Below, piece after piece: positions 13,077-14,865 of a stretch of DNA of 64,000 bases. Both the position numbers and the translations under genes were made by a program. The stretch lies in NCBI RefSeq assembly GCF_033153115.1, contig NW_026889759.1:868001-932000 (forward strand), given 5' to 3'. This DNA comes from Saccostrea echinata. Lineage: Eukaryota. The stretch's first letter is position 1. Each line of letters opens with the position of its first letter. The notes beneath the pieces are model-generated. The model did no database searches. It had not been told where the DNA came from and worked only from the letters and a program-made list of their open reading frames with translations.

Positions 13077-14726
13077 TCAGTGTTTGTAATAAAAGGAAAA
13101 TGAGGCGCCATTTTCTTTTGGTTCATAACTGTCCATTTCTACATTTTTAGTATTCACAGAGGTTGTGTCATTATCTTCAAATGTTTCCCATTTTAAATGA
13201 TTTTGTCCTGCTGCATTTCCAATTTCTTTTAGGTGTCCGTTAGAGAAACAGCCATTTTGTATGTAGGTGTTGTACTGTTTAGAAGGGGGATCATCGATGA
13301 GAACGTCCCGCTCATCTTCTACAGGTTTGTATAGGTATATAGTTCGCAGACACAACAGTAGCGGGGCATACAGTACATTACTGAGAAATATGGCAACATT
13401 AAGCCATAGAAACCCGATTGTCTGTACGATCTGACCGGCCATAACGGGACCAAGAGCATATGCCAAGGAATATGATATGTCGGCAATAGCATAAACACTT
13501 CCGTATATTGATACATATCTCAGGTCAACAAGGTAGCCTAAAGTGGGTAAAATTGCTGTATCGACAAGGGCTACTCCCAAACACAGTCCCATTATTGGAA
13601 ATAATACCACAAAAAATTGTTTAGCAAACGGAATAGCCAGACAGCATGTCCCTTCGATGATTAGCCCCACGGAAGTGATGAGCCACTGATATTTTGGATA
13701 GTTTTTTGCGAGTCTTACCGTTAAGTAAACGCCTCCGATATATGGTAAAAAGGCAGGAAGCCAAACAAATCCTATTTCCCATTCAGAAGCATCCATGGTA
13801 CCTTGCATCCAAAGTGCAATAGTAGGTTCCAAAAACGCAAGAGATACATTAGACATTGCAAGAGCTCCTGCTGCCACCGCGATATATGGATCTATCAAAA
13901 GCCGATATATTGGGGTTCCTTTAAGTCCATCTTCAGAGAGTTCCCTTTCTTTTCTCATAGGTTTCATTACGAAAAGGAGAAGGACGCCATCTATTAAACA
14001 CAGACAAGAGAGAAATATAAAAGGAACGACCTTTCCAGCAAACTCGAAAAGAACACCACCAAATGGAGGTGCAACCAAACAACCAAATGATATGAAGGCT
14101 TGGGCTATTCCTAGAGCCTTTGTTCGTTCAGCGTCGTCTCTAAATCTATCTGCAATCATTGCAAGTCCTGAAGTGTCAGCAAACGCAGAGCCAACACCTT
14201 GTAAACTTCTTGCCACGAACAGGACAGCGTAACTTTCGCCAAAAGCAAACGCAATCGTCGAGAAAAACATGATAGATAATCCAATCATTAAAGGTCGATC
14301 ATATCCTATTCTATCTATTAAAGCTCCAGTAAATGGATTAATGAAAAGTTGCACAATTGCCTTTGATGCAAAAAGGACACCAATTGCGCCTCCTCCTTCG
14401 GCATAAGCTAATGGCTTTTTCGTTGTTGTTGAAAAAGTGGTTGTAATGTTGGTGATAGTACCATTATTAAAATCAGTGTAGTTGTACAGCGTAGAGTCGT
14501 TTCCAGTGCCACTTCCTGTTAGAACCCCCTCATCCTCAAAGTATTTATCCAGATAAAGAGGAACTATTGGTACAATGACCATGTAAAGCATATTATCCAG
14601 AAGCAAAGCTATACACACAATAATGAGTACGAGGCGCCTCTGCTGGATAGGGTCATTAATCCTATCATTCATAATCTGCAAGAAGCTACTACATTTCTCT
14701 CGGACCAAATCCTGTACATATTCCAT
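13077..14726 (-). CDS. SLC18A3: Vesicular acetylcholine transporter (SLC18A3/unc-17 ortholog), intronless CDS, 549 aa from first AUG
   Basis: Long ORF with VAChT motifs: QRRLVLIIVCIALLLDNMLYMVIVPIVP (TM1), glycosylated lumenal loop (NDS, NYT, NGT, NIT), LIDRIGYD, SLQGVGSAFADTSGLAMIADRF, AFLEPTI, YGSVYAIADISYSLAYALGP, tail ERDVLIDDPP. The track starts at TTG 14732; the first ATG is 14726 in a strong context (GAAATGG). Confidence 0.96.
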   Translation of the reverse strand: MEYVQDLVREKCSSFLQIMNDRINDPIQQRRLVLIIVCIALLLDNMLYMVIVPIVPLYLDKYFEDEGVLTGSGTGNDSTLYNYTDFNNGTITNITTTFSTTTKKPLAYAEGGGAIGVLFASKAIVQLFINPFTGALIDRIGYDRPLMIGLSIMFFSTIAFAFGESYAVLFVARSLQGVGSAFADTSGLAMIADRFRDDAERTKALGIAQAFISFGCLVAPPFGGVLFEFAGKVVPFIFLSCLCLIDGVLLLFVMKPMRKERELSEDGLKGTPIYRLLIDPYIAVAAGALAMSNVSLAFLEPTIALWMQGTMDASEWEIGFVWLPAFLPYIGGVYLTVRLAKNYPKYQWLITSVGLIIEGTCCLAIPFAKQFFVVLFPIMGLCLGVALVDTAILPTLGYLVDLRYVSIYGSVYAIADISYSLAYALGPVMAGQIVQTIGFLWLNVAIFLSNVLYAPLLLCLRTIYLYKPVEDERDVLIDDPPSKQYNTYIQNGCFSNGHLKEIGNAAGQNHLKWETFEDNDTTSVNTKNVEMDSYEPKENGASFSFYYKH

Positions 14727-14808
14727 TTCCAAATTTAGAATTAAAATCCTTGGAAACTGAGTACAGTACCTTGAAAATTGTCAACAAGATTTGCGGATTC
14801 TCCGTCAT
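14689..14808 (-). other. Out-of-frame uORF (39 aa) overlapping the VAChT start
   Basis: ATG at 14808 (weak context TGGATGA) reads MTENPQILLTIFKVLYSVSKDFNSKFGNGICTGFGPREM* to TAG 14691-14689, past the VAChT ATG at 14726. Confidence 0.6.
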
Positions 14809-14865
14809 CCACTGAATCCTCTCCTTCACAACACTTTAGGACCTTCCCTCTTTGTGCAGCGAGTC

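What the first reader, a model, noticed from the sequence alone, without database searches (positions are those of the whole stretch)
14689..14865. Candidate splice-or-read-through switch at the VAChT 5' end: uORF with an internal phase-0 donor
Seen: after the acceptor at 14866 the exon has an AUG (14808) whose 13th codon ends exactly at a donor-like AAG|GTACTG (14770/14769). Unspliced, this frame is a 39-aa uORF overlapping the VAChT AUG out of frame. Established: in vertebrates, Drosophila and C. elegans, VAChT is nested in ChAT intron 1 and the two can share 5' exon sequence. Inference: using this donor could skip VAChT and make MTENPQILLTIFK the ChAT N-terminus, while not using it gives VAChT mRNA with a dampening uORF. 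One AUG would then couple enzyme and transporter output. The donor is only moderately strong.
Basis: partly seen in the sequence, partly recalled or inferred. Interest (0 to 1): 0.75.

Follow-up and report, generated by a model that had tools for sequence, protein, structure and literature searches.

The report
Oyster VAChT leader with overlapping uORF
This stretch is the untranslated leader of an oyster acetylcholine-transporter (VAChT) mRNA and holds a small upstream reading frame, but it is not a splice switch that supplies the start of the enzyme ChAT, which has its own conserved start exon further downstream.

Summary
The sequence features are real. AG acceptor at 14867-14866, AUG at 14808, 13 codons ending at 14770 before GTACTG, and a 39-codon uORF (14808-14689) that overlaps the VAChT AUG (14726) out of frame.

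A spliced RNA contig confirms the acceptor. It joins exon 2 (from 14865) to an upstream exon ending at 24476 (AAG|GTAAGT), across a 9,610-nt intron.

ChAT lies downstream on the same strand, as predicted. The key inference fails. ChAT has its own ATG exon, MSTRHVKEYVKRVASIDQEQYPCWDLS followed by GTGAGT, at contig C10:825844-825764. That is about 55 kb downstream of VAChT and 3.9 kb upstream of the RPLPKLPVP exon. It is 27/27 identical to the Saccostrea cucullata ChAT N-terminus and conserved in 11 of 13 named bivalve ChAT entries.

No contig uses the GT at 14769. Three contigs bridge it unspliced.

This is a classical cholinergic gene locus, a new member of a known kind. One mildly unusual point remains: among 54 distant VAChT loci only 2 have such an overlapping uORF, against 15-17 expected. 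It probably dampens VAChT translation; that is inferred.

The parts
24476..24505 (-). 3' end of the upstream non-coding exon 1 of the VAChT mRNA; only the last 30 nt are seen in RNA and the 5' end is unknown. Donor AAG|GTAAGT, with GT at 24475-24474.
   Evidence: The 27-letter loose end of the X1 contig matches 24479-24505 exactly, with 0 matches expected by chance. Sequence read. The phase-0 frame has no ATG in its last 32 codons.
14866..24475 (-). Intron 1 of the VAChT transcript, 9,610 nt, GT..AG.
   Evidence: Depth is zero in all 4 runs over 15001-16400. The short pieces at 16588-16620 and 17094-17191 have loose ends on both sides and look like repeats.
12872..14865 (-). VAChT exon 2: leader, whole ORF and 3' UTR. 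AATAAA lies at 12903-12898, and the lowest contig end is 12872.
   Evidence: X1 contig 12977-14868, X2 contig 12872-14343 and further contigs; sequence read.
14727..14865 (-). 139-nt VAChT-specific part of the 5' UTR, with a single ATG (14808).
   Evidence: Single copy in the genome.
14689..14808 (-). uORF of 39 codons plus TAG, overlapping the VAChT ATG by 38 nt, out of frame. The uAUG context cagTggATGA is weak (T at -3, A at +4).
   Evidence: It is retained in RNA contigs of X1, X3 and X5.
14764..14772 (-). Donor-like AAG|GTACTG at the 13th codon boundary. No evidence of use.
13077..14726 (-). VAChT coding sequence, 549 codons plus stop. The start context ttGgaaATGG is strong (G at -3, G at +4).
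   Evidence: The proteins of 7 relatives align from the same start.

Best explanation
Window 14689-14865 is the VAChT-specific part of the 5' untranslated leader of an oyster VAChT mRNA, inside a classical cholinergic gene locus.

A non-coding exon 1 ends at 24476. It is spliced over a 9.6-kb intron to exon 2, which starts at 14865 and carries the leader, the whole intron-less VAChT ORF and the 3' UTR. ChAT follows on the same strand. Its first coding exon, with its own ATG, lies about 55 kb downstream of the VAChT stop. Its last coding exon lies about 103 kb downstream.

By analogy with ticks, insects, nematodes and vertebrates, ChAT mRNA most likely joins exon 1 directly to the ChAT ATG exon and skips the VAChT exon altogether. 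This step is inferred, not shown.

The GT at 14769 is a chance donor look-alike. The AUG at 14808 opens an out-of-frame uORF that overlaps the VAChT start. Because its context is weak and that of the VAChT AUG is strong, most ribosomes probably scan past it and a fraction is diverted. That would give a moderate, VAChT-specific lowering of translation that ChAT mRNA escapes. This last step is also inferred.
For: The spliced contig gives exon 1|exon 2 at 24476|14865 with GTAAGT..AG. VAChT identity comes; it is single copy. The ChAT exons lie on the same strand at C10:825844-778070. The ChAT ATG exon MSTRHVKEYVKRVASIDQEQYPCWDLS|GTGAGT is 27/27 identical to Saccostrea cucullata ChAT and 25/27 to Crassostrea virginica ChAT. 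The motif is present in 31 of 120 ChATs and in 11 of 13 named bivalve entries.

Contigs of X1, X3 and X5 bridge 14770 unspliced, with no joint or listed loose end there. The same two-exon VAChT layout, with a shared exon 1 confirmed by RT-PCR, is described for Ixodes (PMC7524744, passages), and shared 5' exons are described for moths (bioRxiv 10.1101/2021.03.29.437568, passages). No long ORF with a Pfam match above the curated cut-off lies between VAChT and ChAT, except a reverse-transcriptase fragment (8 of the 16 ORFs of 110 aa or more were scanned).
Against: All four runs are contigs, which drop rare variants, so low-level use of the GT at 14769 is not excluded. By my reading of the HSP ends, local donors are degenerate (only 6 of 12 have G at +5), so GTACTG cannot be dismissed on sequence alone.

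Overlapping uORFs are strongly avoided in other animals' VAChT genes: 2 of 54 non-redundant loci against 15-17 expected. This one is therefore unusual and may have a more specific role than simple dampening, or it may be a recent neutral accident. Its conservation in other oysters was not tested.
Confidence: 0.78

Rival explanations
1. The GT at 14769 is an alternative donor joined in phase 0 to the RPLPKLPVP exon, so that MTENPQILLTIFK becomes the ChAT N-terminus, while read-through gives VAChT mRNA with a uORF.
For: The phases fit: the donor follows a complete codon, and the RPLPKLPVP exon starts in phase 0 and has no ATG. Exon 1 has no in-frame ATG. The N-terminal length of 13 aa lies within the range seen in other ChATs.
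Against: A separate, highly conserved ATG exon supplies the N-terminus and ends in phase 0 with GTGAGT, 3.9 kb upstream of the RPLPKLPVP exon. The proposed splice would skip it. No ChAT among the 120 examined has a similar N-terminus. No contig leaves 14770. A phase match has a 1 in 3 prior.
Confidence: 0.02
2. Minor extended isoform. The 96-nt piece 14865-14770 is occasionally used as a cassette exon and joined to the CAG|G acceptor 21 nt upstream of the ChAT ATG. The uAUG frame then runs without a stop (GLKKFYI) into ChAT and adds 20 residues.
For: The 21 nt between the best acceptor candidate (L013 6866) and the ChAT ATG are open in the phase-0 frame. The Mercenaria mercenaria ChAT entry carries a 19-aa extension before the conserved M.
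Against: There is no RNA evidence. The acceptor position is inferred by eye. The three oyster-like ChAT entries (P0276, P0279, P0320) start at MSTRH.
Confidence: 0.04
3. The uORF is a neutral, recent accident without a measurable effect on VAChT output.
For: 38% of Markov imitations of the leader contain such a uORF. The uAUG context is weak. No conservation data are available.
Against: Such uORFs are rare in VAChT genes of other animals (2 of 54 against 15-17 expected). This argues that they matter when present. An overlapping uORF cannot be followed by reinitiation at the main AUG (established scanning model, recalled).
Confidence: 0.16

Closest known systems
Cholinergic gene locus of Ixodes ticks (PMC7524744, passages read)
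   Same: VAChT has two exons: a short exon 1, and an exon 2 that spans the whole ORF and lies in the first intron of ChAT. Both genes are on one strand.
   Different: In the tick the sharing of exon 1 was confirmed by RT-PCR; here only the VAChT junction is shown. The oyster intron is 9.6 kb. The ChAT ATG exon lies 55 kb beyond VAChT. The VAChT leader holds an overlapping uORF, on which I saw nothing in the passages read.
Cholinergic loci of C. elegans (unc-17/cha-1), Drosophila and mammals (recalled: Alfonso 1994, Kitamoto 1998, Eiden 1998; not read here) and of moths (bioRxiv 10.1101/2021.03.29.437568, passages)
   Same: VAChT is nested upstream of the ChAT coding exons, with common non-coding 5' exon(s) and alternative splicing choosing transporter or enzyme.
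   Different: None of these, as far as I recall, uses a donor inside the VAChT exon to start ChAT, and the oyster does not appear to do so either.
Overlapping upstream ORFs that lower translation by diverting scanning ribosomes (general eukaryotic mechanism, recalled)
   Same: An AUG in a weak context upstream of, and out of frame with, a strong main AUG; termination downstream of the main AUG.
   Different: Not tested functionally; conservation unknown.

Membership tests
Cholinergic gene locus (VAChT nested in ChAT) | VAChT and ChAT lie on the same strand, with VAChT upstream of the ChAT coding exons | tested here: met
   VAChT is at C10:881077-882726(-). The ChAT exons are at C10:825844-778070(-).
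Cholinergic gene locus (VAChT nested in ChAT) | The VAChT ORF is uninterrupted in one exon, preceded by a non-coding upstream exon | tested here: met
   The ORF is 549 aa. The X1 contig is continuous over 12977-14868 and is joined to 24476.
Cholinergic gene locus (VAChT nested in ChAT) | The same upstream exon is spliced to ChAT, so that VAChT lies in a ChAT intron | not testable with these tools
Cholinergic gene locus (VAChT nested in ChAT) | The downstream gene is ChAT rather than another carnitine acyltransferase | tested here: met
   In tblastn with Saccostrea cucullata ChAT, each matched piece (exon) is 78-100% identical. The best full-length relatives are all named choline O-acetyltransferase.
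Alternative 5' splice site giving a dual-use (uORF / ChAT start) exon | RNA molecules spliced at 14770 | tested here: not met
   0 joints and 0 listed loose ends at 14770 in 4 runs; 3 contigs bridge it. This is a weak test: the runs are contigs only, and 8 loose ends and 3 pieces were not shown.
Alternative 5' splice site giving a dual-use (uORF / ChAT start) exon | ChAT lacks a start codon of its own | tested here: not met
   A conserved ATG exon lies at C10:825844-825764.
Alternative 5' splice site giving a dual-use (uORF / ChAT start) exon | Phase compatibility of donor and ChAT acceptor | tested here: met
   Both are phase 0; the prior for this is 1 in 3.
Regulatory overlapping uORF | The uAUG is present in the mature mRNA, out of frame, and terminates past the main AUG | tested here: met
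Regulatory overlapping uORF | Conservation of the uAUG or uORF in related species | not tested
The metagenome scans gave only relatives at 71% identity or less.
Regulatory overlapping uORF | Ribosome occupancy, or an effect on main-ORF output | not testable with these tools
   This needs Ribo-seq or a reporter.

The most novel reading that the evidence does not exclude
The GT at 14769 is a rarely used donor that turns 14865-14770 into a 96-nt cassette exon in a minor ChAT mRNA. Joined to the CAG|G acceptor 21 nt before the ChAT ATG, the uAUG frame stays open. One AUG would then start either a VAChT-dampening uORF or a ChAT with 20 extra N-terminal residues, coupling transporter and enzyme output.
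Probability: 0.04. Interest if true: 0.6.

Novelty: new member of a known kind. Interest (0 to 1): 0.2.

Why it matters
It shows that an oyster keeps the classical cholinergic locus layout: a non-coding exon 1, an intron-less VAChT in a long intron, and ChAT downstream. It also fixes the true ChAT start exon, which is useful for annotation.

The proposed single-AUG coupling of enzyme and transporter would have been a new regulatory principle, but the evidence is against it.

The remaining point of some interest is that the oyster VAChT leader carries an overlapping uORF of a type that other animals' VAChT genes avoid. That would give a transporter-specific translational brake, testable with a simple reporter.

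Tried and rejected
1. I looked for ChAT transcripts of this or a close species that show the 5' junction. A representative search with the 65-aa RPLPKLPVP exon and a word-index search returned almost only single-exon genomic fragments with intron read-through, so they gave no junction. They did show that a phase-0 intron just before [KR]PLPKLPVP is common.

The first metagenome scan found nothing. The second, with alignment A1, returned 80 loci, none more than 71% identical over its best segment and the long matches 43-64%. These are too distant for aligning a UTR, so I used them only for a survey of overlapping uORFs. In that survey the main ATG is taken as the first ATG of the open frame, and genomic contigs may include intron upstream, so it is rough.

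3. Exon 1 as the source of the ChAT start is rejected: the phase-0 frame has no ATG in its last 32 codons.

4. Contigs keep these 13 nt, with 0 gaps, and 7 relatives' proteins start at the same M.

5. Donor strength by consensus counting does not discriminate.

6. The bacterial-type promoter scan of the exon 1 region is irrelevant for an animal gene, and I ignore it.

7. Literature. Two full-text searches showed me no paper on the exon structure of a bivalve cholinergic locus or on a VAChT uORF. I saw listings only: 15 of 108 and 2 of 3. I asked for no supplements; those of PMC7524744 may hold UTR sequences relevant to uORFs in ticks.

Full report
WHAT IS THERE. The window is G000:C10:868001-932000. 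On the minus strand an uninterrupted ORF (13077-14726, 549 aa) is a vesicular acetylcholine transporter. It matches Pfam MFS_1 at E 4.9e-38. It is 100% identical to the called protein P0001, 84-87% identical to unnamed relatives, and 60-68% identical to named molluscan VAChTs such as Mizuhopecten, Ylistrum and Aplysia. It is single copy in the genome at E <= 1e-10. The 174 nt made up of the leader and the adjoining intron end (14727-14900) are also single copy.

THE OBSERVATION.
- AG at 14867-14866.
- ATG at 14808.
- MTENPQILLTIFK ending at 14770.
- GTACTG from 14769.
- A 39-codon uORF ending with TAG at 14691-14689, out of frame with the VAChT ATG at 14726 and overlapping it.

RNA EVIDENCE. 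The look-up of sequencing runs listed 16 runs, of which 5 hold half or more of the sampled words. I laid four of them (X1, X2, X5, X3; three samples, two studies) on window 12801-18800. All four are Logan contigs.

In X1 a 1,919-nt contig covers 12977-14868 with no gap or mismatch. It then carries 27 letters that do not fit the adjacent DNA. Those letters match window 24479-24505 exactly, with 0 chance matches in 100 shuffles. There the minus strand reads ...GTGTTATCATAAAG|gtaagt. Because AAG fits on both sides, the junction is 24476|14865, with a canonical GT..AG intron of 9,610 nt.

Depth is zero in all four runs from 15001 to 16400.

Across the proposed donor, contigs of X1 (12977-14868), X3 (14509-14847) and X5 (14603-14850) bridge 14770 with more than 31 letters on each side. 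The X2 contig (14533-14797) crosses it with only 27 letters upstream, below the tool's criterion. No joint and no listed loose end lies at 14770; 18 loose ends are listed and 8 were not shown. So the read-through form exists and the spliced form was not seen. Contigs cannot exclude a rare form.

WHERE CHAT IS AND HOW IT STARTS. A six-frame Pfam search of the whole genome places Carn_acyltransf exons on the same contig and strand at C10:778259-821817. The first of these exons begins directly after ttttacag with CGA CCT (RPLPKLPVPDLQ...). It is in phase 0 and has no ATG.

Exon 1 offers no start either: its phase-0 frame has no ATG in the last 32 codons.

A full-length relative found with that exon (P0124, later named Tubulanus polymorphus choline O-acetyltransferase-like) has 28 residues before KPLPKLPVP. 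In tblastn against the 156 kb I had fetched, those residues gave a weak hit (E 6.8, 9 of 26 identical) at C10:825841-825764 on the minus strand, ending exactly at the exon boundary.

Reading that place shows ATG TCA ACA ... CTG AGT | GTGAGT. This is MSTRHVKEYVKRVASIDQEQYPCWDLS: 27 codons, phase 0, with a strong donor. It lies 3.9 kb upstream of the RPLPKLPVP exon and about 55 kb downstream of the VAChT stop.

The third protein search (query P0124) returned 120 listed ChATs. Their N-termini settle the matter:
- Saccostrea cucullata ChAT (partial entry, P0320) begins MSTRHVKEYVKRVASIDQEQYPCWDLSRP|LPKLPVPDLQRTL.
- tblastn gives 27/27 identities to the exon (E 3.3e-12).
- Crassostrea virginica ChAT gives 25/27 (E 1.7e-10).
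- With a regular expression for the motif, 31 of 120 proteins carry it. These include 11 of 13 named bivalve entries; the Solemya velum and Mya arenaria entries do not.
- The motif also occurs in nemertean, brachiopod, annelid, bryozoan and flatworm ChATs.
- None of the 120 N-termini resembles the uORF peptide; the best is 5 of 13 ungapped identities.

The remaining ChAT exons follow down to C10:778070; with the Saccostrea protein each matched piece is 78-100% identical. ChAT therefore has its own ancient start exon. MTENPQILLTIFK is not its N-terminus.

CHANCE. AAG|GTACTG matches 4 of 7 variable consensus positions, and 565 of 3,390 GT sites on this strand of the window do as well or better. 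Local real donors are themselves degenerate. By my reading of the HSP ends, 6 of 12 have G at +5, so sequence alone neither supports nor excludes use. In 20,000 Markov imitations of the 139-nt leader, 38% contain an overlapping out-of-frame uORF and 6% also contain a codon-boundary GT of equal quality.

WHAT IT MOST LIKELY IS. This is a classical cholinergic gene locus. The layout seen here is a short non-coding exon 1, then an exon 2 with the whole VAChT ORF, then ChAT downstream on the same strand. It is the one described for Ixodes, where the sharing of exon 1 was confirmed by RT-PCR (PMC7524744, passages), and for moths (bioRxiv 10.1101/2021.03.29.437568, passages). From recall it also holds for C. 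elegans, Drosophila and mammals.

Sharing of exon 1 with ChAT in the oyster is inferred, not shown. The best acceptor candidate before the ChAT ATG is CAG|G at L013 6866, 21 nt upstream of the ATG.

Between VAChT and ChAT I found no long ORF with a Pfam match above the curated cut-off, other than a reverse-transcriptase fragment at window 4679-5104. Eight of the 16 ORFs of 110 aa or more were scanned. Multi-exon genes would be missed by this test.

THE uORF. It is in the mature VAChT mRNA. Its AUG has T at -3 and A at +4. The VAChT AUG has G at -3 and G at +4. Under the scanning model (recalled), most ribosomes would pass the uAUG. Those that start there terminate 38 nt past the VAChT AUG and are lost for VAChT. 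ChAT mRNA would not contain this exon, so the brake would be specific to the transporter.

In a rough survey of the metagenome-derived VAChT loci (80 fetched, 67 usable, 54 non-redundant), only 2 have an out-of-frame uORF that starts within 90-120 nt and overlaps the main ATG. Dinucleotide-preserving shuffles predict 15-17. The oyster uORF is therefore unusual for this gene, which is the only mildly surprising result. Whether it is conserved among oysters could not be tested.

WHAT REMAINS POSSIBLE. If the GT at 14769 were used and joined to the CAG|G acceptor of the ChAT ATG exon, the uAUG frame would stay open through GLKKFYI into the ChAT ATG, adding 20 residues. There is no evidence for this. 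I put it at about 4%.

VERDICT. The acceptor and the locus architecture are confirmed. The proposed splice-or-read-through switch and the shared AUG are not supported. This is an ordinary cholinergic locus in an oyster, with a somewhat unusual overlapping uORF in the VAChT leader.

The earlier scan note s1-803326 concerns the same stretch; its 13-nt 'intron' is not removed in RNA.

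Noticed in passing
L013 6764-6844 (= G000:C10:825764-825844, minus strand; about 42 kb left of the window): The ChAT first coding exon encodes a peptide, M..HV[KR]EY[VI]KRVASIDQE.YP.WDL, that is conserved across molluscs, nemerteans, brachiopods, annelids, bryozoans and flatworms. It is absent from the vertebrate, echinoderm and amphioxus ChAT entries listed. I do not know its function.
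   Followed up: partly
L024-L103 (metagenome VAChT loci): Upstream ATGs, and especially out-of-frame uORFs overlapping the start codon, are strongly depleted in front of VAChT genes of diverse animals. Only 2 of 54 non-redundant loci have one, against 15-17 expected.
   Followed up: partly
window 24601-24610 (minus strand), about 125 nt upstream of the exon 1 donor: A perfect palindrome GTCACGTGAC (E-box/CRE-like core) is followed by TAAT-rich sequence (ccaattaatgattattc). It is a possible promoter or enhancer element of the locus, or part of exon 1.
   Followed up: no
window 14757-14769: The 13 nt GTACTGTACTCAG begin with GT and end with AG. RNA contigs keep them, and 13 nt is far below any workable intron size.
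   Followed up: yes
window 16588-16620, 17094-17191, 17553-17755, 18357-18615: Short pieces inside VAChT intron 1 are matched by high-depth contigs that run on unlike the window on both sides. They look like expressed repeats or transposon fragments, not exons of this gene.
   Followed up: no
window 4679-5104 (minus strand): A reverse-transcriptase (RVT_1, E 1.8e-13) ORF fragment, that is a retroelement remnant, lies in the stretch between VAChT and ChAT.
   Followed up: no
P0288 (Mercenaria mercenaria ChAT entry): It carries 19 extra residues (MLTAWTTYFKHIRFVVRTK) in frame before the conserved start M. An upstream exon with an in-frame AUG may therefore exist in that clam.
   Followed up: no
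window 12872-13076 (minus strand): The VAChT 3' UTR is at least 205 nt, with AATAAA at 12903-12898 and the lowest contig end at 12872. Three of the four runs have contigs that stop at 12976/12977, for a reason I do not know.
   Followed up: no
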